Translations under genes and position numbers: made by a program
Source: Ginglymostoma cirratum
Taxonomy: Eukaryota
Direction of reading: 5' to 3'
Assembly (NCBI GenBank): GCA_024137785.1
Contig: JAHRHZ010000145.1
Coordinates: 35,729,435-35,793,434 of the forward strand
DNA: 64,000 bases
Notes under the pieces: model-generated
What the model saw: only the letters and a program-made list of their open reading frames with translations
What the model was told of the DNA's origin: nothing
Databases searched by the model: none
Shown: positions 17,862 through 51,311 of the stretch, piece by piece
Position numbering within the stretch: position 1 is the stretch's first letter
Layout of the letters: every line of letters starts with the position of its first letter

Positions 17862-18261
17862 NNNNNNNNNNNNNNNNNNNNNNNNNNNNNNNNNNNNNNN
17901 NNNNNNNNNNNNNNNNNNNNNNNNNNNNNNNNNNNNNNNNNNNNNNNNNNNNNNNNNNNNNNNNNNNNNNNNNNNNNNNNNNNNNNNNNNNNNNNNNNNN
18001 NNNNNNNNNNNNNNNNNNNNNNNNNNNNNNNNNNNNNNNNNNNNNNNNNNNNNNNNNNNNNNNNNNNNNNNNNNNNNNNNNNNNNNNNNNNNNNNNNNNN
18101 NNNNNNNNNNNNNNNNNNNNNNNNNNNNNNNNNNNNNNNNNNNNNNNNNNNNNNNNNNNNNNNNNNNNNNNNNNNNNNNNNNNNNNNNNNNNNNNNNNNN
18201 NNNNNNNNNNNNNNNNNNNNNNNNNNNNNNNNNNNNNNNNNNNNNNNNNNNNNNNNNNNNN
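17862..18261. other. Assembly gap (400 N)
   Basis: Run of N. Confidence 1.
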
Positions 18262-31446: not shown

Positions 31447-31497
31447 CTCCAAAGATTCAAGACAAAATTGAACAGCAAATAGAAATGGAAGTGAGAG
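31447..31497 (+). CDS. TTN: Titin micro-exon (human exon 47 equivalent)
   Basis: tgcag/gtaata, 51 nt; APKIQDKIEQQIEMEVR versus recalled human APESILHERIEQEIEMEMK. Confidence 0.9.
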
Positions 31498-32740
31498 GTA
31501 ATATTTTTATCATTATTCGATAAAAATTTCTTGAATTTTATATCAATTTTAAGTTCCAATTACTGCCCTGTATGCATTGGTATTTTGCCATCATAGTAAG
31601 TTGTGTTGCATTGCAAAATATCAAAATCGCATGTTATCTGTTTCTATCTGATTTGTTCACAAGTCTGGTTTGTTGTCATCATTTTCATATTGGTGTAAAT
31701 AAAATAATCCTTTAACCTCAATATTTATTTTACAGGCAACTTTACTTTTTTAACATGTATTAGTTCCTCACAATTCAGTCGAATTTCAATTTTGAATTGC
31801 TTATAATCGTAATTGATATGCTGCAACAGGAACATATAGAGATGCATTTTAGATTCTATTAAGAAGTATATAATGAGGTGTTTAAATCAATTGTCAATTA
31901 TTTGCCATTTCATAATTGAATGCTAGACGTATATATTTATTTTATGATTACTAGAATCAGTACTTCTGTTTGCATCGTGCATTTCTGCGTTTCCATTAAG
32001 GTTTACCATACTAATTGCATCTGGTATTTAGGAGGACTTGTAGGGTGCATTTTGCTAAAGAAACTTGGTCAGGGTATTTTTCATTTTTGTGTCTAGTTTT
32101 TCCATTTACATGACATCAGTCTATCTTCATGTATTCACACTGGCTTGCAGATAGCAGTATGTGTTCATGTACGCTGGCATTTTTGCGTAACATTGTGAAT
32201 CTAGCAACTATATTAGTTCGAATAAACGCCTTCTCATGCAAATTAGAAGGATTACTGTTACGGATAAATTTATTTCCTTCTATTTATTAAAATTTTTAAA
32301 TTATTTACCAAACTTGCTATACAATTTACCTATGCTGCAAGGATCAGAAAGGGCGTTTATTCTGCTGTCTGCAAGTCAGGTAAGAGCTTGTAATAATCTA
32401 GCTATCCCCCAATCATTATAGGGACAGATTTTACATTGCAAAACAAAACAAAATTCTGTCATGAGATCACTTTATGTTTCTTTGAAAACATATACTCTAA
32501 TGATTTTTGAGAAGAAATTGCTACAGTCTGAAGAAGGAACAAAGAACGAGCGATTTTCCTGCTCAGAATCTTTAAAAAAGAAAATGGTCTTGCGTTTATT
32601 CGAACAAATATGGTGAGTGAATTTTTATAGTACTTGTGAAAAAGCTTATGGATTACATTCATCATTTCATTGTATTACAGATTTGTGCTGAATTTAATTC
32701 TTATAATGTTTGAACTGAAACTTCATGCTTTTTTTTGCAG

Positions 32741-35700
32741 AATTATTTTTTGATGACGGGAGAGAACATTTGGAGAACAGAGAAAATATGCGGGAAGCGT
32801 TTTCTGATGCTGAAGATTATTTAGATCAGGGACTTGTTTCTGCTGATCGTTGTGCAAGCAGAACATCTTCTATAAGTTCCTGGTCTGAGAATTTCAGGCC
32901 ATCTTTTACTGAAAAGCTAAAATTCAAATCTGTAATGGAAGGAGAGCAAGCTATTTTTAGATGCAAACTTGTTGCCAGTCCTGCACCAAAGGTTGCATGG
33001 TTTCATAACAACAGACCCGTACATAAAGATTCAAGAAGGATTATTAAAATAGATAGCGCGATGCACATTCACAACTCAAGTTTGGAAATCAATAATGTAG
33101 AAGAGAAAGATTCAGGAAGTTACAGAATATTTGCAATAAACTCTGAGGGTTCAGCAGAAGCAACTGCATCTTTACTTGTTGCCCTTAAAGAAGAGCAAAA
33201 TGCAAATTATATCAGTTTTGTGAAAAGATCAGAAATGGCTCACAAGAGCATAGACTCTTTAGTTAAAAAACGTAATGCAAGACTTAGAGTTGATCTCCGA
33301 CATGTTGGATCTCCTTTTGATAAGAAATATCAGGTTCCAGGAATTTTGCATAAACAGCCAAATTCTAAAAGCAAACTGATGCGTACAATGTATTTTGAAA
33401 GAATGCCAATAAAACATGATCTGTTTAGTGATGATTCTGTAGAAATGCAGTCATCTAGGTTGTATGGGAGGATTCACAGCAAGGATAGTTTGATTGATGA
33501 AGACATTAAAATTAAATTACAGCTTTTACGAGAAGCTAAAAGGAGGAAAAGGTTTTCTCTTGCATTTTCTGAAGCATCATTTGACTTGGGCACAGCATCA
33601 ACTGAAGGCAATATGAAGTACAATTATGCTGACTTAGACAGAGGGCGCAGCAGAAGCATGGGGGACCTTGACCACATGGATTTTGATTGTTGTCAGCCTT
33701 ATTTTGTGCAAGGACATGAATTGTCATCTGGTAAATATTTGCAGAGAGAATATCCTGAATTTAAATATCGAATGGAATGGATATTAGGACTTCCTTCACA
33801 TGAAGTAGAACCTCAGAGAGCCCCTGAAGACAATATTATTGAGCAATCTTACAGAACAAAAGATATACATTCATTAAAAGAGCAAGTTCTGAAAGATAAT
33901 TTAACTCAAGAGACAGAACAGTCACAGAAAAATCAACACTGGCTAGAAGAACAAGAAACTGATGAATACTATTTTCAGAAAGAATATGATACAAGAAAAG
34001 AACTAGAGAGTGAACATTGTGAAGAACCACAGGCGCCGTCTAACCAATGGTTTGGATCCACCTCTGGTAAGCAGAGGACTTCACTAACTAAAGGGAAAGG
34101 AGTTATGCTTGAACCTTCCAAGTTTGAAGAAACAAAGTTACTTAAAGAAATACCACAATCTGAAGACAGTGATTGTACGGAAATGCTATTGAAGAAAGAA
34201 TTCCCAACATTCACCAGAACACTGATAAAACAAATTCCTGTGCCATTAAAGAAATATCCAAGTAAGTCTGACTTCAAGGAAGACCATGACTTACTTTCTG
34301 CTAAGTGGTCTGAAAGTTTAATGAGTATGCAGAGTTCACCAGCAAAGGAGACTGAAACTGACCAGTCAATGGTTGATGGTTCCAAAGCAACTGAAGTCAA
34401 TGTATCCAGGTTTGATGAAAAAGCTGAGATAATGAGAGAACGTACACAAAAGCCAAAGCCTTCTCCCTTAGAGGAAGAAGAAATCGCAACCATTTTCAGA
34501 GCAGCATTAGAAGATAACACGTTAGGAAGAAGCAAAACATGTCAAGTTGAAATCAAAGAACATCCAAATGCATTTCAAGACCAAAGGGCTGGGAATGTGT
34601 CAGTAAAACAAACATCTGGATTTGACCATATAACCTTTGATCAAATGAAACCAGTATCCAAGGATAGTGTGACAAGTATCTCTAAAGTCCACCATGAAGC
34701 CATACAATATGAAAATCAAGTTAAAGATTATACCCATATGATGACATCCTCTATTTTACCAGAGCAAAAAGCAACCTCAGGTTTTATCAGTTCTTTGGTG
34801 AAAGAAATACCAGAAGAAGTAAAAGATACTTCTTATAAATCCAGTAAGGTAGACCATGAGACACCTCTGGGACAACAGCCTGAGAGATTCATTCATGTAC
34901 AGAGAGATTTACCAACTCAGAGACCTGAGAGCCATCATATAATGTCTGATCAATCTGAATCATCAGTTAGCCAGGAAGAGATAATTAGTACACCCCAAAT
35001 CAAGCAAAATAAAACACAAGGTGAAGGACAGTTTATATTTTCCATCCATTCTTTGAGACATTCTCCCTTGACAGCAAAAACCAGAGAGAGTGCAACTTTT
35101 GCCAGAACAGTGATAAAACAAAAGCCAATGGAAACAAAAGACTTTCCAAATGAATTTAATGTTAAAGAAGAAAGTGAGCCAATTTCTGATAAAAGGCTTG
35201 AAAGTATTAATCATGCAGAGGAAGACACTCCAGCAGTAACATCTGAAGATATCCATGCAATCCAAATGCCTGGTCAATTTAGATCAACAGTAAATTTAGA
35301 TCAACAGTACAGAAAACATACAGAGGTGATTGGTGCATCTAAACTCAGCCAAAAAGAACAGTATGAAAGCAAGGTTAAAGACTTCACTTCAACGCCGAAC
35401 CCTTATAAATTTAACAAAGAAGAACACTCAACATTTGTCAGTTCATCAACAAGTGAAACAGCAGTAGAAGCAAAAGAATTTCGTTATGAATCCGAAGTTG
35501 AGGAGAGTGGCACAAAACCTCCAGATCAATTTGTTGGAGATTTTGTTAGTATGATGAGAGAGTTTGGAACAGAGCTATCTCCAGCTGCCCATCCTGCACC
35601 CGACAGAGATTTTGTAACAGAAATATCTAAAGATGTCCATGTTGTACCTAACGGAGATTTTGTGGCAGAGGTATCTGAAGATGTCCATGGAATACCTACT

Positions 35701-37888
35701 CGGGATTTTGTAACAGAAATATCTGCAGATGCCTATATTGTGCACAACAAAGATCTTCTGGCAGAAATATCCAAAGATTTCCATCCTGCAGCCGACAGAG
35801 ATTATGTAACAATAACATCTAAAGATGTCCATACAGTGCCCAATACAGATTTTGTAACAGAAATATCTAAAGATGTCCCTATGATACCTGACAGAGATTT
35901 TGTAACAAAAATATCTGCAGATGCCCATCCTGCACCCGACCAAGATTTTATAACAGAACAATCTAAAGATGTCTATGTTGTACCTGAAAGAGATTATGCA
36001 ACAGAAATATCTGAAGATGTCCAAACAATATCTGACAGAGATTTTGTAACAGAAATATCTAAAGATGTTCATGCTGTATCTGACAGAGATTTTGTAACAG
36101 AAATATCCAAAGAAGTCCATACAGTACCCGATAGAGATTTTGAAACAGAAATATCTGAAGATGTCCATACGATACCTGACAGAGATTTTGTAACAAAAAT
36201 ATCAGAAGATATCCATGCTGCATCTGACAGAGATTTTGTAATAGAAATATCTAAAGATGTCCATGCCGCATCTGACAGAGATTTTGTAACAGAATTATCT
36301 AAAGATGTTCATGCTGCATTTGACAGAAATTTTGTAACAGAAATATCTAAAGATGTTCATGCTATACCTGACAGAGATTTTGTAACAGAAGTATCCAAAG
36401 AAGTCCATACAGTACCCGATACAGATTTTGAAACAGAAATATCTGCAGATGCCCGTCCTGCACCCGACCAAGACTTTGTAACAGAAAAATCTAAAGACGT
36501 CTATATTGTACCTGAAAGAGATTATGTAACAGAAATATCTGAAGATGTCCAAACAATACCTGACAGAGATTTTGTAACAGAAATATCTAAAGACGTTCAT
36601 GGTGTACCTGATAGAGATTTTGTAACAGAAATATCTAAAGATGTCCATGCTGCATCTGACAGAGACTTTGTAACAGAAATATCTGCAGATGTCCATGCTG
36701 CACCGAACATCAATTTTGTAACGGAAGTATCTAAAGATGCCCAGCCTGTGCCTGACAGGTCAAAACCAATGGTAAAACAAATAGAGATAACCACCTTTTC
36801 TAAAGTCTCCCATAAAGAGTTACAACCTGCAGATACAACAGTAAGCACTGTTCAAGTAGTACATCCTTCTTCGCCAGATGGCAAACTTGAGCCAACCTCT
36901 TTTAGTTCATTGATAAGAGAAACAGCAATAGATACAAAAGAGCCTGGATATGGATTTGAACTTATGGAAGAACATGAAACAGATTTTGACCAGCAGTGTA
37001 CAGGTTTTGACCGTGTACAAAAGGATGTGCAGTTAGGGAAACCTGAAGAAGGTCATGAGCAAACCAAATTGGCAGAAAATCACATTGAAATAATAAGTGT
37101 AGCTAAAATCAAACAGAAAGAGCCACAATATGAAGCAAAGCTTGTGAGCTCCCCCTGGATGGTAAAGCCTTCTCCTTTACCAGAGGAAATGGAAACTTTA
37201 ACTTATGTCAGTGCATTGAAAAAGCCATCTCCAATTGGCAAAATAGGATCAGGTGACAAAGCAGAATTTAGGGAAAGCCATGAGACAGCTCTTGTCAGTG
37301 CTACCAGAATGCACAAAGACTTCCTGAAAGAAAATCAAGAAGACAGCCATGGAACATCTGATCAATCAACAGATGGAGAAACAGCAATGATTAGCACATC
37401 TGAAAGTATCCAGAAAGAATCACAACAAAAATGGAAAGTTGAAAATAACATCCAAACAGCAAAAATGCCTTCCTTAACTGAGGAAAACAAAACATCAGGT
37501 TTCATCAGTTCGTTCATGGAAGAGACACCAACAGAAGTACCAAGCAGCCAATATGAATTTGTAGCTACAAAAGGGCCTCTGAAACAAGAGACTCCTGCAG
37601 TCAAACATTGCCCACCTACGTTTTTCCATCATATTGCATCTTCTGAAATTAAGCAAGGAGAATCATGTGTGCTTGAGTGCCAGTTTTATGGGCACCCACT
37701 ACCGACTGTAGTTTGGTACAAGGATGAACGCCCAATTTCTCGAAATAGGGACTATCATATTCACTCCACAGAAAACAGCTCTACATTGAGTATTGGGTGC
37801 ACTTGCAAAGAACATGAAGGAGTATATGCATGTGTAATATTCAACCAATATGGAACTGCATCTACATTTGGGACCGTTGTAATACAAG
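32741..37888 (+). CDS. TTN: Titin novex-3, first part (two Ig domains plus a long repetitive unique region)
   Basis: ttttgcag acceptor, gtaaga donor, 5148 nt, phase 1-1; ELFF...AFSDAED...RPSFTEKLKFKSVMEGE...AINSEGSAE matches the start of novex-3. Confidence 0.93.
35590..36741 (+). repeat. Coding minisatellite: 24 x 48 bp (16 aa, consensus HxxPDRDFVTEISKDV) inside novex-3
   Basis: 24 indel-free units counted directly (24 x 48 = 1152 bp); recurring DNA core gacagagattttgtaacagaaatatctaaagatgtccat. Confidence 0.97.
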
Positions 37889-37998
37889 GTAAGATTCACC
37901 ATTCTTTACTGATGAATTTTTTAAAATTAAAGTATGTTGCAATTAGATATTTATGAATTAGGATTTTCAATTAAGATAAAATAACATTTATTTTCCAG

Positions 37999-40900
37999 AA
38001 CCAGAACCAAAGTTGTTTGAAGAGTCTTTGGAAAGGTTTGATATACGTGTGACGGAGGCACCAGAGAACAAGACTGAAGAAGATAATGTTGATCAGCTGA
38101 TTGAAAACGAGATGGAGTCGTATTTTCCAGAATTTGCTGTAACAAGATCCACATTACAATTACCAAAAGTTTCAGCACCCCAAACATGTCCCAGAGGTTT
38201 TTCTTTACTTCCTTCCCCTGTTGAAATTAAAATAACTGCTCCAACCCCAACACCAGAGCAAGATGAGGAACGTAAAGAGTTACTGCAAGAAGATGAATTT
38301 GATTCCAAGGATTCATCTCAGGAACCGCTGTCACAGACTGCAAAGCATAAATTTACTTTCTCTTTTGACGTAATTTCTGAACCGCCACAAGTCGTGAAAG
38401 AACTAGATAGGATTTGTTGTGCAGAAGGAGAATCCGTAATGTTTGAATGTTTAATTTCTGGAGAGCCAACACCTGTTGTTTCATGGATCCAAAATGACAG
38501 AGTTTTAACTGGTGATAATAGCAAGCACCGATTTGAAGAGAGTGGAGGCAAATATAGATTGTACATTGAAACTGTCTCAGCATCTGATATGGGGAACTAT
38601 AAGTGTGTTGCTAAAAATAAAGCAGGAGAAGTACAAAGTATATCAAGTCTTACAGTACAGCCTGTAGTGCATAGTTTTATTTGCCATCTGAAGGATACTG
38701 AGTCATCTGATGAGGAAGCAGAGTTGTCAGTTAGCCGTTTTCTATTCAATCTAAGTAAAACAGAACAGGTTGAAGACATTGAGCAGCAAAAGCAATTATC
38801 AGTACAGGAAGGGCACAGGGATGCTTCTCCTTTATTTAGCATTAAAGAACAAGCACTTAATTTTATTCCTGAAGATGAAGGTTCTGTGACTTGCATTGGT
38901 GATGAATTTTCAAGTAAAGTTTCATCTTTAAGGGAAGGGAACAATAAAGCAAAACTGAGCTCATTGAATTCCTTTTCTGAAGAAGTTTCATCTTTAAGGG
39001 AGGAGGGTGATAAAAAATTCACAGATTCAGCAATGCCCTTTGGTGAATTTTCAAGCAAATGCTCATCTTCAGTGAAGGCTGGTAATAACATTGCCGCAGA
39101 CTTTGAACAGATAGATCAAAAAGTGTCAAATAACACAGTAGAAGAGACATGTTCTATCAGCGAATATTTACGGTCTTTTGATGCAAACCAGAAGTTATCT
39201 AAAGATTGGAAAACGGGAAGGGAAATAGAACAAAATGGGGACAAATGTGCCTCGGAAGGTGAAATGTATGAGGATAGCGTATTTTCAGAAAGTGTAATTC
39301 AGCAAGTCGCTAAAAGTAATGGGGCAGAAACAACAGAAAATGTGTCCAAGATGGAGTTAAGTGGTAACTTAGCATCTCCTAAACCTGACTATGATGTTAG
39401 TGTAGATCCAATAGGAACAACCACAAATAAAGATGAGGGGAGTGAAAATGAGGGGGTTTCAATTGCACAGTATCTCCTTTCCGCAAGACAGGAAGAAGCA
39501 CAGATTCACGAAGAGGCAAATAATGAGACATTTGGCTACGATGAATCTGGAATAACTTCGATGGAGGTTGAGGAAGTAACATTTGCTGCTGTTTATGACT
39601 ACTATAATCAAAATGAAGAGTGGACACGGTCTCTTTCTCCAGAATCTGAAATGTCGATTGAAATTAGCAGTACAATTAGTGATGATGTTTCGGAGAATGA
39701 AAGATTTTATACACCACCTTTGGCTTCTGAAAACTACCGATCTGCTGTGTCTGCAGAGGCTTTCCATACCCCACCTCAGTCTCCTGGCTATGCCACTCCT
39801 CCAGAAATATTGCCTTTACTTAATGTGGGTCGATCTTCTGGTGCTTTACTAGAGAGGTTTCATACACCACCAGAATTTTTCAGAACTCCAATAGACGAGG
39901 GTATTGAAACAACTCCTCTTGAGTCTGTAAGTCTTGCTACTGAAGAGCAAAGATCAGAGTTATTTTCCACACCACCACAAGAAACTGAAGCAAAAGGAAA
40001 TGAAATGCCACCTGCATTTATCAAACCTCTTGTTAGAAAAAGAATTCACGAAGGAGGCACACTTACATTTATCATTGAGGTAATTGGTTGCCCAACTCCA
40101 AATGTTAAGTGGTATAGAAAAAGGTCATTATTAGAGCCAAACCATAGAACTAGACTTGAGAGAGAGGGAGGTTTGTGTTTATTGGTAATCCATAGTATTC
40201 AGAGAGAAGATGAAGGAGAATACACTTGCAGTGCTGTAAACATCGTAGGGGAAGCCAAAAGTGTTACTCGGGTAGATGTTTTACCTCAGGATGGAAGGTC
40301 AATTGCATTGCCACTCCCAGTGACTCATCAACACGTTATAGAGTTTGATGTGCAGCAAGGCCAAACATCAAGGTCTCCTTCACCTCAAGAAATTCTTCTG
40401 GAAGTTGAACTTGATGAACATGAAGTGAAAGAATTTGAAAAACAGATAAAGATTGTTACAATTCCCGAATTCACTCCTGACAATAAAAACATGGTTATCT
40501 CCCTGGATGTTCTTCCTTTGATGATGTCTGATGAACATAACGTTGACTTTTTAATAAAAGATAATGAAGATGTGAAAATTGACTTTGAGGTCACAGAAAT
40601 GCCCCCACGATTTATTAGCCATATTTTTGACTTTGAGATTCCAGAAAACACTGATGCAGTCTTTGAATGCTCAGTAACAGGTATTCCTAAGCCTGAGGTA
40701 ATGTGGTTCAGAAATGATTCACTTATAACATTCGATGGCAAGAAATACATTAGAACAGATACCCCTAATCATAGTCTTAAAATAACCAATGTTTGTCCTT
40801 CTGACAGCGGCACATACACTTGCAAAATAGTGAATAGTGTTGGAGAAACAACATGTAGAGGCTATCTTACAGTAACAAATGCATGTATGGCACTGACAAA

Positions 40901-41510
40901 AGCAGGTGGTAGAGCTGTTGCTGCTATATCATTAACTCGTGCTCAGGAACGTCCCCAGGAATTAGATGTTGATATTGGTAATCCTTTACTGCAGAGCAAT
41001 CAGGGTTCTGAAATCGAGGTTGAGTTTGACATTGAACAAGGTAGAGATGATTCTCAGAAATCAGTGAAGCTCGTAGCCTTGACAGAGAATGCAAATGAAG
41101 ATAAAGGAGAGAAAAGTGTGAACATTAGTTTTGACGTATTTGCTGAGCCTGCCAAGGAGGAGACTATTCAATTTAAGGGAGAAGCTTCTGAAAACTGTTC
41201 ATTTGAATTTCAAGTGACAGAAACTCCTCCAAGATTTGTAATATCCCTCCTTGACTGTATCACCAGCATTGGGAGCATGGCATCTTTTCAGTGTGTTGTG
41301 ACTGGTACTCCAAAACCCAATGTGATTTGGTATATGAATGACCAAGTACTTGAAGATGGCAACTGCATCATTGAGGAAAAAGACTCTGGGCATCATTATT
41401 TGAACATTGCACATGTTACAGAAAGTGATGCTGGAGTATATAAATGCAAAGCTGTTAACAAAGCTGGGGAAGCAGTTTCAGAAGCAGTTTTAAAAGTGTT
41501 GTATTTGTAA
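37999..41510 (+). CDS. TTN: Titin novex-3, second (terminal) part: four Ig domains and stop codon
   Basis: ttttccag acceptor in phase 1; KHKFTFSFDV, ITSMEVEEVTFAAVYDYY, SPSPQEILLEVELDE motifs; ends TAA at 41508-41510. Confidence 0.93.
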
Positions 41511-41548: not shown

Positions 41549-41554
41549 AATAAA
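41549..41554 (+). terminator. Candidate polyadenylation signal of the novex-3 isoform
   Basis: AATAAA 38 nt after the novex-3 stop, followed by T/GT-rich sequence. Confidence 0.55.
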
Positions 41555-46486: not shown

Positions 46487-49400
46487 AATTTTCTAGCTCT
46501 GTTACCATTGCTGCTGAAGATAAGAGGGAAGATTTCTACAGTAGTGAACTTCATGTGTCAGACAAAACATTTGAACTCAAGCCTGAAACTGCGACCCTTT
46601 CTAGCGTTTTGGAAATAACCACTGATGCTAAGCCTCTACAAACAGTGCCAGTATTCATTAAGCGCATTTCTAGTATAGAGGTAGTTGTGGAAGATGTAGC
46701 TAAATTCTCTGTCACTGTTACTGGATTCCCAAAGCCCTCTATTCAGTGGTTTCATAACAGTAAAAAATTGACTCCTTCGTCAAACTTCAAATTTGTTTAT
46801 GATAGGGATGAATATAGCCTAATCATACCTTATGCAAAATTTACAGATGAGGGAGAATATAGTTGCTCTGCTACTAATACACTTGGAGAGACTTCATGTA
46901 GTGCATACCTGAAGATCAAACCAAAGGAAGGGTTTAAGAAATCTTCTGCAAAGCCCCCACTTGCAAAATTAGCAGATAGAAAAATGCCAGTGATGCCAAC
47001 AGAAATCATACATCCACCTAGGGGTCAGCCACCACATTTTTTCCAGGAACTTAAGTCTTTGCAGTGCCCAGAAGGCCTGCCCGCTGTATTTGAGTACGTA
47101 GTGATAGGCGAACCAATACCAGAAGTTTTTTGGTACAAGGAAAACAACCAAATTCATCAGAGTTTGCATTGCAGCCTTAGTTCTAACTCTGACGGCTCTG
47201 GTTCATTAACTATTAATAAAGCACAGAAAGAGGACAGTGGCTTGTATTTCTGCAAAGCATTTAATCAGTTTGGGGAAACAACTTGCACTGCAGAGCTAAT
47301 TGTGTTCAGTGGTACGTTTGTTACCACTGAACATACAAAACAGGAAGTTGCTCATAAGCAGACATATAAAAAGTCTGTAAGTGACCATGCCACAGAGTCA
47401 CGTCTGTTCATGGTAACATTGCCTGGTGATGCTCAGGCTGAGTTACAAGACAGAGATCAACTGGTCTATACGATAGCTTCTGAAGATAAACATTCTGTTC
47501 ACAGTGAACAGACAGGCATGTTGCATGAGGTAACAGTCTCTGCTGCTGAAGCAACAATTGCAGGGAAGAGTCAGATAGTAATGCATTCACAAACTACTCA
47601 AGAGAGTCTAGGATATGTAGAGCAACATTATGAACCTATTAAAAGTCCACCAATACTTGAATTGTCAAGCACTGAAGTACGGTTAGACGCTGCCCTTCGT
47701 TTGCCCACAGTTGAGGAGCAAACAGTCATTCCGAAGGAAAGTAGCTTTAGCATTAGAGATTCACCTACTATAACGGCTAAAACAAAAAGAAAAGAAACAA
47801 GCATCTTATCTGAGGAAAAGCATCTAATTCCTAGCTCCGGGACTTCAACTCTTGACATTGTAGAAAAAGAAATATCAAAAACAGAGCCTGCATATCCTTT
47901 ACACAGGTACAAGATTGAGGGACATCAAGAACCTCCCAAAGAAGCATTGTTTGCTTTTGAAATTCCCGACGGACAGAAATGTGAAATACAAAGAGAAAGA
48001 AAAATGGAGGTTCATACAGCCGTAGCAACAGAGAACAAAAGAGTAAGACATGAAATGACAAAAGACATACAAACATTAGATGCAGCAAGAAAGGCAAAGT
48101 TGTCAAAGGAGTTGCCAAAACCATTCTTGACGTCTGTTACTGAAAGCCAGAAATCACTGCCAAAGGAATCTCTGTTTGAAGTGCAAAATGGTGACATACG
48201 GCAAGCTTCCTTGATGAAAGATAAGTTTGTTAAAACTGCTTTAACTACAGAAGAAAAGCAACAGCTCATGGGTGAACATGCTGATATAATAATTGGTTTA
48301 GATAGTGCAATCTCAATAACGTCAAAAAAAGAAGAAAAGAAACCTTTGCATTTACAAATTGTGCAGGGACAGGACACTCTGCCCAAAGAGACAACTTTTA
48401 CTTTTGAAGTACCTATAGAAGAGAAAGCTGACACCAGAAGAAGCCCAACTTTGCTACATTCCTTACTATCAGAAGAGCAACATCTTATACCTCAAGAACA
48501 TACAACTCCGTTATCTGATGCAAAAGATACCACAATAATTAAACCTACAAAAGAACATATGCCTATTTTTTGTCCTCATTCTGTGATGACTGCATGCATT
48601 CTTCACAAGGAAGATCTTCTACCTTATGAGAAACCAGCTACTCGTATGGCAGGACACAGACTTGAGAAAGCATATAGCTATGCTGCTGTTGTAGAAGAGA
48701 AACCAGAATTGCTAGCTGAACAAACTAAAATGCTTGTAATGGAAATTAAAAGTTCAAAGGCTGAAGCCAAAACTGAGCTTCTGCCACAAGAGTCTCTTCC
48801 ATCTGTAACTGTACCAATGCACATAGCAAAGGAGAAAATGCTTACCATTGAGGGTAAAGAACAGCGTGCAATCATAAATAAATTGGATGACACAGTCAAA
48901 CAGTTCAGTACTATAACCGAGAACAAGGTAGTGGAAGATGGTTCTGTTGCCATGTTTGAAGGCTTAGATGCAGCAAGCTGTGAAGACAAATATGAATCGA
49001 AACTCCCTTCAATTTCTGTTCAGGTTAAAGAAAAGCCTGTAGCTATTGAAAGCACCACAATGTTAGAAGCTGCAGAAAAGGATTTTGCAGCAAGAATCCA
49101 ACAGGGACAGTCAGTAAGATTTCCATTGTTGCTTCAAGAAAAACACCTCATTGAAGAAGAACATTCTTCAGCAATCGCAAGATCGGAAAGGAAAGTTCTA
49201 AAGGTAGAAAAGCAACCAAAAGAGAAATTTCTCACTCATGTAATACAAGAAAGTGAGGTACTCCAAAAAGAAAAAGTACTTAATGTTGAAGTTCCCCAAG
49301 CAGCCACCTTAGATGTTGGTGTACAGATTAGAAAAGCATTGCAATCTGCTCTGGCAAGTGAGCAATGTGTTCTTTCATCTATCTCATTGGGTGGCATAGA

Positions 49401-50347
49401 AGAGATGGAGATTAAGGAATTAAAAGTTCAAAAAGAACCCAAGTGCATTTTATATACATATCAAGTTACTAATGTCAATCCTCCAATAGACATAACTCTG
49501 TCATTTGAAGGAGAATATCCTCAGAAAGCTGACTTAAGAAAAGAATTGACAGCTGCTTTCCATGCTATTACTCATGAACAATGGCGTGCTTTTCTGGCTG
49601 AACAACTGGATACAATCCGTCCACCAACTGATATGTTAGAAAAATTACACATTAGCATTACTCCTGCTAAAGAGATTTTCTCACCTGAGGCTGTCACCAT
49701 TTCTGAAAGCACCTTTGAGGCCGGGATGCAGTTGACTGAACAGAAACTCCAGACAAATGTTACAGTTTCCCAAGATTATTCTGTAATCTCAAAGAAGGCA
49801 GCTGTTCAAGAAATGACAACAACCACTGAATCAGAGGGTTTTACTCAGGATTTTAAATCTGTGGAAACTGTTGAAGAAGTGACAATAGTGAGTCACATGA
49901 GAGATGTTGGTGGTACAATAATTACTACAGATGCCCCTTCAGCACCTGTTCCAATCGAACAGCCAACAGAAATTCTCAAAAAAGAGAAGGAAATGGAAGA
50001 AGTTATAGGTACTCATATTTCTAAACCAAGAAAGCTAGGTGAAACACCAATAAAGCCCCCCAAAGACAAACCAGTAATTGTTAAAGGACTGACAGACATC
50101 ACTGTTGATGAAGATAGTGAAGTAAAGTTGAGCACAGTCATAACTAAAGTTAACAAGGTAAATTGGTATATCAATGGGAAACGAATCACTTCAAAAAATG
50201 AGTTCAAATGTTTGCAAGAACGTGACACTTACTCACTTATAATCAACAAAGTACAGAAAGAGGAGCATCAAGGAGAATATGTCTGTGAGGCACTGAATGA
50301 AGCTGGAAAAGCAACTACTTCTGCAAAACTCACAGTTATTATAAGAG
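46487..50347 (+). CDS. TTN: Titin N2B exon (I24, I25, N2B unique sequence, I26; human exon 49 equivalent)
   Basis: tacag/gttgga, 3861 nt, phase 1-1; EFSSS start, KALQSALASEQ, and FKCLQERDTYSLII...HQGEYVCEALN of I26. Confidence 0.95.
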
Positions 50348-51311
50348 GTTGGATTATGGGGATAAAATCTTTGTTAATATAAACTTCAAAAGCTAATATA
50401 AACTAACTGCGTAGTAATTTCTCAAAACCCAAATCAGTTTACTATAACAAATTAACATGACTAGATACCTCCTTTTGCTCCTTCCCTTCCTTCCTGTCTT
50501 CCTTCTTTCCTTCCTTACTTTAAAAGTAAAAGAATGGTTGCATAACCTAGTTGTCTATCTACTGTGCAGTCAAAGCCTGAAAAGATTGTATCAGTTTATT
50601 CCATGAATATTTAACAAGTTGTTAAAAATTAGCATCATTACTTTAGAAAGAACGTTTCAGCTGATTTTGTGTTAATTTAAATGAAAATCCATTCCGATTT
50701 GATGTAATCTTCACATGCTTTCACTGCTGATAATGTGTAACTTTGAAAGCTTAATGCTATGTTTAAACCTTACTGTGAATATATTTTCTTTATTGCCCTC
50801 GGTACTTTAACATTACCTATTAATTCGCATCAGCCATGGTATTTTAAATTTCTACTAACTGACATAATATTCTTTTCATCCCCATATCCACATCTGAAGA
50901 GTTGCTGAATTTTATCATTGTCACCACTTTTGTCATAACGAAAAGTCAACTGAACATTGCATTTCTTCCTAAACCTTAATATCACCTTTTATCATCTACT
51001 TTTTTCTAGGAAAAAAACATTTCATAGATGTACCAATTATTTGCATGCTTCTGGGCACCACACATGTCAATAAATCGTGAATTTCATTCATTGAATTCTT
51101 ACCATTTATTGTGTTGAGCACAACTACTGGTCAGCTAACATCTGTTAACAATCATTTCTTCTCCACAGTCACCCTTTGGATTGTTAGTTTCTTTCACCCT
51201 CCCTCCACCATCCTTGAGCTTCCGAGGGCCATGTCTAGAACCTGTGCTAAAGAAATATGGTTTACTGTTGCTATCTTCTCACAATTTTTAATTTACATTT
51301 TAAATCTGTAG

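What the first reader, a model, noticed from the sequence alone, without database searches (positions are those of the whole stretch)
35590..36759. 24 x 16-aa coding tandem repeat (HxxPDRDFVTEISKDV) in novex-3
Seen: 24 exact-length 48-bp units plus a partial unit. There is higher-order structure: units 8-10 (PAPDQDF/YVVPERDY/QTIS) recur as units 19-21, and units 11-12 recur as 17-18, indicating block duplications. The unit is acidic, with hydrophobic F,V,I,V at i, i+1, i+4, i+8 and frequent Pro between units. I do not recognise it from mammalian titin. Inference: a lineage-specific extensible element or a multivalent binding array. The rotated unit KDVHTVPDRDFETE only loosely recalls the 16-aa Xin actin-binding motif GDVxxxRWLFETxPLD and lacks the W/L and PLD, so that link is speculative.
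Basis: partly seen in the sequence, partly recalled or inferred. Interest (0 to 1): 0.75.

Follow-up and report, generated by a model that had tools for sequence, protein, structure and literature searches.

The report
Carpet-shark-specific 16-residue repeat in titin novex-3
A short 16-amino-acid piece of the small titin isoform (novex-3) has been copied head to tail 24 times in this shark and 21 to 47 times in two other carpet sharks, while other sharks, rays and a chimaera keep at most one copy; it looks like a young, fast-changing stretch of flexible linker rather than a new kind of protein domain.

Summary
In detail: 24 exact 48-bp in-frame units plus a partial one at 35590-36759, with no indels and the block duplications described.

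- **Location.** The array lies in the titin novex-3 region. Here that region is split by a 110-nt intron into a 5148-nt phase 1-1 exon (32741-37888) and a terminal exon (37999-41510).
- **Origin.** The insertion between the first two Ig domains holds nine ~94-aa super-repeats, conserved across cartilaginous fishes. The 16-aa unit is the amplified tail of copy 6.
- **Distribution.** Stegostoma has 21 units, this window 24 and Chiloscyllium 47, all Orectolobiformes. Basking shark and sawshark have one clear copy, three batoids a weaker one, and the chimaera none recognisable.
- **Evolution.** It behaves as a coding minisatellite, with a shared 6-unit higher-order repeat, homogenisation in Chiloscyllium and inter-unit pN/pS of about 0.76.
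- **Expression.** RNA contigs of a relative contain array units. One contig joins exon 47 directly to the terminal exon, skipping the array exon.
- **Function.** An acidic flexible spacer is my inference only. The Xin link is not supported.

Another note of this scan (s1-879888) covers the same stretch.

The parts
35590..36741 (+). 24 full 48-bp (16-aa) tandem units, consensus HAVPDRDFVTEISKDV
36742..36759 (+). partial 25th unit (QPVPDR) that runs into the single-copy sequence SKPMVKQIE
35542..35589 (+). degenerate 'unit 0' (FVSMMREFGTELSPAA), the upstream edge of the amplified segment
32741..37888 (+). array-bearing novex-3 exon ('48a'): 5148 nt = 1716 codons, phase 1-1, AG acceptor at 32739-40, GT donor at 37889-90
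32899..33180 (+). first Ig (I-set) domain of the novex-3 region (aa 53-146 of the exon translation)
34000..35574 (+). super-repeat copies 1 (partial) to 6, about 94 aa each; copy 6 (35320-35574) lacks its tail, which is replaced by the array
36784..37578 (+). super-repeat copies 7, 8 and 9 (partial)
37612..37845 (+). second Ig domain (aa 1624-1701)
37889..37998 (+). 110-nt GT..AG intron that splits the novex-3 coding region
   Evidence: the Stegostoma model P0001 joins the two exons at exactly this point
37999..41510 (+). terminal novex-3 exon ('48b'): four Ig domains plus insertion sequences, ending in a stop codon
41549..41554 (+). AATAAA polyadenylation signal 39 nt after the stop
31447..31497 (+). 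51-nt phase 1-1 mini-exon, counterpart of titin exon 47; in an RNA contig of a related species it is joined directly to 37999
   Evidence: exon 47 sizes of 45-57 nt in Table 1 of PMC5852582

Best explanation
The array is a lineage-specific coding minisatellite in the novex-3 (Nx3) isoform region of titin.

Origin. The long insertion between the first and second Nx3 Ig domains is built from nine ~94-aa super-repeats in cartilaginous fishes. In the carpet-shark lineage (Orectolobiformes), the 16-residue tail of super-repeat 6 was amplified in frame. That tail is single-copy in the basking shark (RDFVTEKSEDAHGTTSR) and the sawshark.

Remodelling. Unequal crossing-over or replication slippage has since reshaped the array. 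A 6-unit (288-bp) higher-order repeat arose before this species and Stegostoma split. Later came block duplications, a local triplication, and strong homogenisation with doubling in Chiloscyllium.

Why it stays open. A frameshift would cut off the five downstream Ig domains, so the frame is maintained.

Protein-level effect (inferred, not shown). The array adds about 390 residues of acidic chain (net charge -56), punctuated by proline and probably mostly disordered. That is roughly 140-148 nm of extra contour length between the two Ig domains. It would act as a flexible spacer or entropic spring, and it also multiplies a weakly amphipathic motif. Because the exon that carries it is symmetric and can be skipped, the spacer is probably optional.
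For: Shown:
- The array is real and in frame.
- The locus layout matches titin novex-3: a 51-nt exon 47, a 1.2-kb intron, about 8.7 kb of coding sequence with 3+3 Ig domains, a stop and AATAAA, then a 3.8-kb exon with three Ig domains. This fits Table 1 of PMC5852582 and the Nx3 description in PMC13649281.
- NCBI names the orthologous models 'titin-like'.
- A super-repeat HMM built only from array-less species finds 9 copies in the window. Copy 6 is truncated at HMM position 86 of 94, exactly where the array starts.
- In basking shark and sawshark, the upstream and downstream flanks are separated by only one unit.
- Copy numbers are 21, 24 and 47 in three orectolobiforms.
- Edge units are orthologous between this window and Stegostoma (81 of 96 residues in units 1-6). 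The interior shares the same order of unit types.
- 38 of 47 Chiloscyllium units match their own species better than any other species.
- RNA contigs of a related species include 208 nt of array.

Basis for the spacer inference:
- Composition: net charge -56 over 384 aa, and mean hydropathy below the charge-hydropathy boundary.
Against: - No RNA of the window's own species was seen.
- Contigs cannot show how often the array exon is included. The one junction seen into the terminal exon skips it.
- pN/pS between units is 0.76. Old edge units are no better conserved between species (84%) than the surrounding insertion (87-88%), so there is no clear sign that selection acts on the unit sequence.
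- The disorder call is marginal (mean hydropathy 0.445 against a boundary of 0.466). The hydrophobic moment peaks at a helical angle, so the units may form short helices rather than a random coil.
- No structure prediction or nucleotide-level comparison with relatives could be run.
Confidence: 0.6

Rival explanations
1. Multivalent binding array. Each unit is a short amphipathic helix capped by P-D-R-D that binds a sarcomeric ligand or Ca2+, and amplification turns one site into 21-47 sites.
For: The hydrophobic positions F8, V9, I12 and V16 fall on one helical face, and the hydrophobic moment peaks at 90-100 degrees (0.5-0.68). The same tail motif, [KR]D[FLV]...[ED][ED].H, recurs in other super-repeat copies and in all cartilaginous fishes examined. 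The core residues T10, E11, S13 and D15 are kept in 80-84 of 92 units pooled from three species. No unit among the 92 has a length change.
Against: pN/pS between units is 0.76 in the core as well as the linker. Position 8 is F in two species but V in most Chiloscyllium units. No partner is known, no Pfam family matches and no structure was obtained. Conservation within a species can be explained by recent duplication alone.
Confidence: 0.2
2. The array is not part of the protein. It is removed as a cryptic intron, or the exon that holds it is normally skipped.
For: A contig of run X15 joins exon 47 directly to 37999 and skips 32741-37888. Its 24-nt overhang matches 31470-31493 exactly, with 0 of 100 shuffles giving a match. 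The exon is symmetric (phase 1-1, 5148 nt), so skipping keeps the frame.
Against: The same run has contigs over much of the exon at similar word depth (about 200-314), including 208 nt inside the array. No joint inside the array was reported. The frame has stayed open over 1152 nt here and over 21 and 47 units in two other species, while the other + frames hold 22 and 34 stops. The NCBI models of Stegostoma and Chiloscyllium include the array.
Confidence: 0.07
3. Xin-type actin-binding repeats, which also have 16 aa.
Against: No Xin family among the Pfam hits of the exon at E<=0.01 or of the array at E<=10. There is no W, no L and no PLD in the unit profile. The unit derives from the tail of a titin-specific super-repeat.
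Confidence: 0.02
4. Assembly artefact: a collapsed or inflated repeat.
For: Short-read contigs of related runs break up inside the array, so the copy number cannot be verified from them.
Against: Independent gene models from two other species carry arrays in the same place. X14 contigs identical to the window cover units 8-15. The units are diverged enough (77% mean identity) to assemble.
Confidence: 0.02

Closest known systems
Titin novex-3 (Nx3) region, exon 48 of tetrapods and zebrafish
   Same: Position after a 45-57-nt exon 47 and before the N2B exon. It has its own stop codon and polyadenylation signal. It holds six Ig domains arranged 3+3 with long insertion sequences.
   Different: Here the coding region is split by a 110-nt intron into a skippable exon and a terminal exon. 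The first insertion also holds a 24 x 16-aa array that I found in no other group. No tetrapod or teleost protein reached E<=1e-3 with the insertion as query, so homology of the insertion itself to tetrapod Nx3 is not shown.
Titin PEVK and other tandem-repeat elastic segments of titin-like proteins (invertebrate TTN-1 and I-connectin repeats are recalled, not tested)
   Same: Short units repeated head to tail in a non-globular stretch between Ig domains of a giant muscle protein. Copy number differs between lineages.
   Different: P+E+V+K make up 32% of the array, against about 70% quoted for PEVK (PMC12241362 passage). The unit is 16 aa, acidic and Asp-rich, with one Pro per unit. It lies within one exon, not one unit per exon.
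Coding minisatellites with higher-order repeats and concerted evolution
   Same: Exact period, block duplications, copy-number change between related species and homogenisation of interior units while edge units stay diverged.
   Different: It is embedded in an older, protein-level ~94-aa super-repeat and derived from its tail.
Xin repeats
   Same: 16-residue unit length.
   Different: No profile match and no W/L or PLD motif.

Membership tests
Titin novex-3 region | Lies between a ~50-nt exon 47 and the N2B exon | tested here: met
   A 51-nt exon at 31447-31497, then a 1243-nt intron. A 3.8-kb ORF with three Ig domains at 46555-50382 follows. Compared with Table 1 of PMC5852582.
Titin novex-3 region | Own stop codon and polyadenylation signal | tested here: met
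   Stop at 41508-41510 and AATAAA at 41549-41554.
Titin novex-3 region | Six Ig domains (3 N-terminal, 3 C-terminal) with long insertion sequences | tested here: met
   Pfam I-set finds 2 stretches in the first exon and 4 in the second. The long gaps lie after Ig 1 and after Ig 3. Description taken from PMC13649281.
Titin novex-3 region | Encoded by one exon | tested here: not met
   A 110-nt GT..AG intron at 37889-37998 carries in-frame stops. The Stegostoma model is spliced exactly there.
Titin novex-3 region | Sequence homology of the insertion to tetrapod Nx3 | tested here: inconclusive
   Only chondrichthyan proteins matched the flanks: P0001, P0002, P0003 and P0012 of 46 hits. The representative library may not hold the Nx3 isoform of tetrapods.
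Xin repeat | Match to the family profile; conserved W/L and PLD | tested here: not met
No Xin hit at E<=10. The column profile has no W and no PLD.
PEVK-type segment | P, E, V and K make up about 70% of residues | tested here: not met
   P 5.5% + E 8.3% + V 13.3% + K 4.9% = 32%. Criterion from a PMC12241362 passage.
Coding minisatellite with concerted evolution | Exact head-to-tail period, copy-number change between species, interior homogenisation | tested here: met
   0% indels. 21, 24 and 47 units. 38 of 47 Chiloscyllium units are closest to their own species.
Proline-punctuated amphipathic helical repeats | Each unit forms an amphipathic helix | not testable with these tools

The most novel reading that the evidence does not exclude
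The tail motif of the Nx3 super-repeat is a conserved ligand-binding amphipathic helix. Carpet sharks have turned one such site into a 21-47-valent scaffold carried on a regulated cassette exon. This would give them a tunable Z-disc/I-band cross-linker that no other vertebrate has. It would also reveal the function of the nine-fold super-repeat that makes up the least understood part of novex-3.
Probability: 0.15. Interest if true: 0.65.

Novelty: new variant of a known kind. Interest (0 to 1): 0.4.

Why it matters
Novex-3 is the least understood titin isoform, and its long insertion sequences have no assigned structure. Three things here make it more tractable.

1. The first insertion is not featureless in cartilaginous fishes. 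It consists of nine ~94-aa super-repeats, conserved from chimaera (seven found) to sharks and rays.
2. One 16-residue piece of that super-repeat has been amplified to 21, 24 and 47 copies in three carpet sharks. This is a natural series of linker lengths in an otherwise conserved protein.
3. In these fishes the novex-3 coding region is split, so the part carrying the first two Ig domains and the array can be left out without breaking the frame.

None of this overturns what is known about titin. It is a clear case of a young coding repeat in a disordered linker, useful mainly to people who study titin evolution or want natural length variants of Nx3.

Tried and rejected
- **Xin repeat link.** Rejected: no Pfam hit at E<=10 and the motif residues are absent.
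- **The 42 hits P0004-P0011 and P0013-P0046 of the representative search.** They align only to the array part of the query (best stretches within query residues 506-931, against the array at 531-920). The 15 whose matched stretch I printed (P0005-P0011, P0013-P0020) and P0004 (printed in full) are unrelated short-period repeat proteins; for example, P0004 is a protein with ESNKDLDT repeats. The other 26 (P0021-P0046) I judged only from where they align. None of the 42 has the D[FY]V[TA]E[IVL]S core, which occurs in 1 of the 46 hits, P0001. I dropped them as compositional matches.
- **DUF2192 Pfam hit on the array** (E 1.1e-4, 22.3 bits, no single stretch passing). I treated it as inflated by repetition.
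- **PDB searches with the Ig parts**. They gave generic I-set matches with titin near the top. They do not identify novex-3 specifically, and I do not use them for that.
- **Selection from paralogous units.** Differences from the consensus are spread 64/46/49 over codon positions 1/2/3. pN/pS is about 0.76 in both the variable linker (residues 1-6) and the core (7-16). The core is less diverged at synonymous sites too (pS 0.19 against 0.41). This gives no clean evidence of protein-level constraint.
- **Structure prediction and fold search.** The Atlas could not read the sequence.
- **Wider species sampling.** Three word searches returned only five distinct proteins, from five species: Stegostoma, Chiloscyllium, Cetorhinus, Pristiophorus plus the query itself. 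Longer or shorter models are invisible to that tool. Whale shark, nurse shark, wobbegongs, carcharhiniforms and heterodontiforms therefore remain unsampled.
- **Literature.** Searches found no description of this array or of a novex-3 super-repeat. PMC12241362 left the Novex-III exon out of its model (passages). I did not ask for the supplementary files of any paper. The supplementary figures of PMC12241362, PMC13649281 and PMC6098106 could hold novex-3 domain maps that bear on the novelty claim.
- **Joined model.** The exons were searched apart.
Full report
**1.

Tandem Repeats Finder finds one array at 35557-36758 with period 48, 25.0 copies, 76% matches, no indels and score 1224. From 35590 it reads as 24 full units and a partial 25th, all in the frame of the long ORF. 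The coding frame has no stop in the 1152 nt of full units, while the other two + frames have 22 and 34.

The consensus is HAVPDRDFVTEISKDV. Residues 7-16 are the conserved part: S13 in 24 of 24 units, D7 and D15 in 22 of 24, T10 and E11 in 21 of 24. Residues 1-6 vary.

Units 8, 9 and 10 match 19, 20 and 21 at 43, 46 and 46 of 48 nt. Units 11 and 12 match 17 and 18 at 45 and 45 of 48. The mean over all pairs is 37.2 of 48.

**2. Gene context.**

The array lies in an exon at 32741-37888. This exon is 5148 nt, or 1716 codons, in phase 1-1, with an AG acceptor and a GTAAGA donor. It encodes an I-set Ig domain at each end and 1477 non-Ig residues between them.

A 110-nt intron (37889-37998) follows. 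After it comes an exon (37999-41510) with four more Ig domains. That exon ends in a stop codon, with AATAAA 39 nt later.

Upstream is a 51-nt phase 1-1 exon at 31447-31497. Downstream, a 3.8-kb ORF carries three Ig domains.

This is the layout of titin around novex-3. Table 1 of PMC5852582 gives exon 47 as 45-57 nt, the next intron as about 1.0-1.1 kb, exon 48 as 6.1-8.0 kb and the N2B exon as 2.5-3.8 kb. PMC13649281 describes exon 48 as encoding over 2000 residues, six Ig domains (three N-terminal and three C-terminal) and long insertion sequences (abstract and passages). NCBI names the orthologous models of other species 'titin-like', 'unc-89-like' or 'uncharacterized'.

The one departure from tetrapods is that novex-3 is split here by the 110-nt intron. 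The Stegostoma model is spliced exactly there. I did not build or search a joined protein; the exons were searched apart.

**3. Relatives.**

A full HMMER scan of 1.84 billion representatives used 1200 non-Ig residues around the array and gave 46 hits at E<=1e-3. Four are true relatives:
- Stegostoma tigrinum XP_059503180.1 (81% identity)
- Mobula birostris
- an Amblyraja radiata cluster
- Callorhinchus milii

The other 42 align only to the array part of the query. The 16 whose matched sequence I looked at are unrelated short-period repeat proteins. None of the 42 has the unit's core motif.

Word searches added Cetorhinus maximus, Pristiophorus japonicus and Chiloscyllium punctatum.

Arrays in the same position:

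| Species | Units |
|---|---|
| Stegostoma | 21 units plus a partial one |
| This window | 24 units plus a partial one |
| Chiloscyllium | 47 units plus a partial one, all in exact 16-residue register; 11 of 47 are identical |

Both Stegostoma and Chiloscyllium are Orectolobiformes.

In the basking shark (Lamniformes) and the sawshark (Squalomorphii), the two flanks are separated by a single unit...FVSKRRDFVTEKSEDAHGTTSRPIPVFKQIE... and its sawshark equivalent. Mobula, Hemitrygon and Amblyraja have a weaker single copy. In Callorhinchus it is not recognisable.

The array is therefore present in 3 of 3 orectolobiform sequences and in 0 of 7 others. By identity, the window's species is closest to Stegostoma: the terminal exon is 94.0% identical. 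Its pre-array insertion is 88.1% identical to Stegostoma and 77.7% to Chiloscyllium. I was not given its name.

**4. Where the unit came from.**

Self-comparison showed that residues 636-916 of the exon, before the array, are paralogous to 1341-1605, after it (27% identity over 285 residues, E 6e-18). Further hits lie at offsets about 100 residues apart.

I built a profile only from the five array-less species. It finds nine copies of a ~94-residue super-repeat in the window, at exon residues:
- 420-450 (partial)
- 465-543
- 550-623
- 643-734
- 746-840
- 860-944
- 1348-1439
- 1449-1537
- 1547-1612 (partial)

E-values run from 9e-5 to 2e-31. An iterated profile gave nine copies in each array-less elasmobranch tested and seven in Callorhinchus. 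In Stegostoma and Chiloscyllium it gave the same nine super-repeat copies plus further partial matches inside the array.

Copy 6 stops at profile position 86 of 94, which is exactly where the array begins. The profile's tail (...KDLLTEKPEEDHEI) is the counterpart of the unit. The other copies in the window keep recognisable tails: QRDLPTQRPESHH, EEDTPAVTSEDIHAI, QKDVQLGKPEEGHE and HKDFLKENQEDSHG.

The array is therefore the amplified tail of super-repeat 6. This agrees with the scan's other note on this stretch (s1-879888), which I tested here.

**5. How the array evolves.**

Between the window and Stegostoma, the first six units and the last one are one-to-one orthologues: 81 of 96 and 14 of 16 residues identical.

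The interior shares an ordered set of six unit types, read from the listings and the matrix:
- one ending SKEV
- HTVPD.DFETE
- .IPDRDFVTKI..ADA
- PAP.QDF
- .VPERD
- QTI.DRD

This is a 6-unit higher-order repeat that predates their split. Each species then has its own block duplications. The window has a local triplication (units 14-16) and a hybrid unit 18 that suggests an unequal exchange; that reading is inference.

In Chiloscyllium the interior is homogenised to HFVPDRDVVTEISKDV. There, 38 of 47 units are closer to a unit of their own species than to any unit of the other two. The figures are 8 of 24 for the window and 9 of 21 for Stegostoma.

Divergence between the window's units gives pN/pS 0.76, in the variable linker and in the core alike. 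The old edge units are 84% identical between species, against 87-88% for the surrounding insertion and 95-98% for the Ig domains.

I read this as a repeat kept open because a frameshift would remove everything downstream, with little extra constraint on its sequence. The absence of any length change in 92 units is compatible either with unit-wise recombination or with a constraint on unit length. I cannot separate the two.

**6. Expression.**

No run on record as RNA holds the stretch. Run X15 comes from a related organism about 4-7% diverged. It has only 48 million letters, yet its contigs lie on both exons at word depths of 200-314, and nothing covers the 110-nt intron.

One of its contigs runs from 37997 into 26 letters that do not fit the intron. 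Twenty-four of those letters match 31470-31493 exactly, at the end of exon 47, and 0 of 100 shuffles gave any match. The contig therefore shows exon 47 spliced to the terminal exon, which keeps the frame.

This shows two things. The run is RNA, and the array-bearing exon can be skipped.

The same run has contigs over 33200-34063, 34266-34538, 34977-35497 and 37142-37804, plus 208 nt inside the array (35931-36138, 20 differences). The exon and at least part of the array are therefore transcribed. No joint inside the array was listed.

Contigs cannot give isoform ratios, and holes prove nothing. I saw no 48a-48b junction in reads, only in the NCBI model.

**7. Likely role (inferred).**

The 384 residues of full units have 93 acidic and 37 basic residues, giving net charge -56, and 5.5% Pro. 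Their mean hydropathy of 0.445 is just under the charge-hydropathy boundary of 0.466. The hydrophobic moment peaks at 90-100 degrees.

The array would add about 140-148 nm of contour length to the linker between the first two Nx3 Ig domains. In mammals the proximal part of the exon-48 region is reported to bind laterally at the Z-disc/I-band junction, while the C-terminus stays near it (PMC13649281, abstract and discussion passage).

My best reading is a tolerated, optional, acidic flexible spacer. The rival reading is that each unit is a short amphipathic binding helix and the array a multivalent scaffold. That reading is not excluded.

**8. Comparison and novelty.**

The array is not a Xin repeat and not PEVK-like in composition (against the passage). 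It matches no Pfam family.

My literature searches found no description of it. The one paper on cartilaginous-fish connectin left the Novex-III exon out of its model (PMC12241362, abstract and passages). I did not open the supplementary files of these papers, and they could bear on this.

I class the finding as a new variant of a known kind: a lineage-specific coding minisatellite inside a known titin isoform region. Interest is moderate. It is a clean evolutionary case and offers natural length variants of Nx3, but it poses no mechanistic surprise.

**9. Limits.**

- There is therefore no nucleotide comparison with relatives and no structural model.
- Species sampling is limited to the models that the length-restricted word search could see.

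Noticed in passing
window 31447-31497, 32741-37888, 37999: The first novex-3 exon is a symmetric (phase 1-1) 5148-nt cassette. It holds Ig 1, nine super-repeats, the array and Ig 2. An RNA contig of a related species joins exon 47 directly to the terminal exon. A short Nx3 form lacking all of this therefore probably exists in these sharks.
   Followed up: partly
window 34000-35574 and 36784-37578: The insertion between the first two Nx3 Ig domains consists of nine ~94-aa super-repeats. An iterated profile found nine in each array-less shark, ray and skate tested and seven in the chimaera. It matches no Pfam family, and I found no paper describing it.
   Followed up: yes
window 32500-32612: A conserved element lies about 130 nt upstream of the array exon. 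The gene models of chimaera, rays, basking shark and sawshark start with its ORF (MIFEKKLLQSEEGTKNERFSCSESL...) and splice it to the array exon. The segment 32527-32612 (86 nt, with an alternative acceptor 15 nt upstream) fits the conserved 85/100-bp exon 48' of PMC5852582. Read in two frames, the window appears to have one extra A in an A-run near 32574-32579. That would break the ORF relative to the other species. The Stegostoma and Chiloscyllium models also start further downstream. I did not check this against reads.
   Followed up: partly
window 35276-35309: A 17-bp direct duplication coincides with a 21-nt, 7-residue (VNLDQQY) insertion that only the window has. Runs X15 and X6 lack it, and so do all other species aligned.
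   Followed up: partly
window 37889-37956: Reading through the 110-nt intron gives GKIHHSLLMNF... and then a stop. A skate contig ORF (P0003) ends in the same GKIHH read-through. The intron therefore appears to be shared with batoids, and retaining it would give a truncated product.
   Followed up: no
window 36985-37053: The DNA contig of run X6, from a related organism, has about 23 extra letters at 36985-36997 and a 9-nt insertion after 37053. These are small in-frame length differences in super-repeat 7.
   Followed up: no
window 17862-18261: A 400-base run of N.
   Followed up: no
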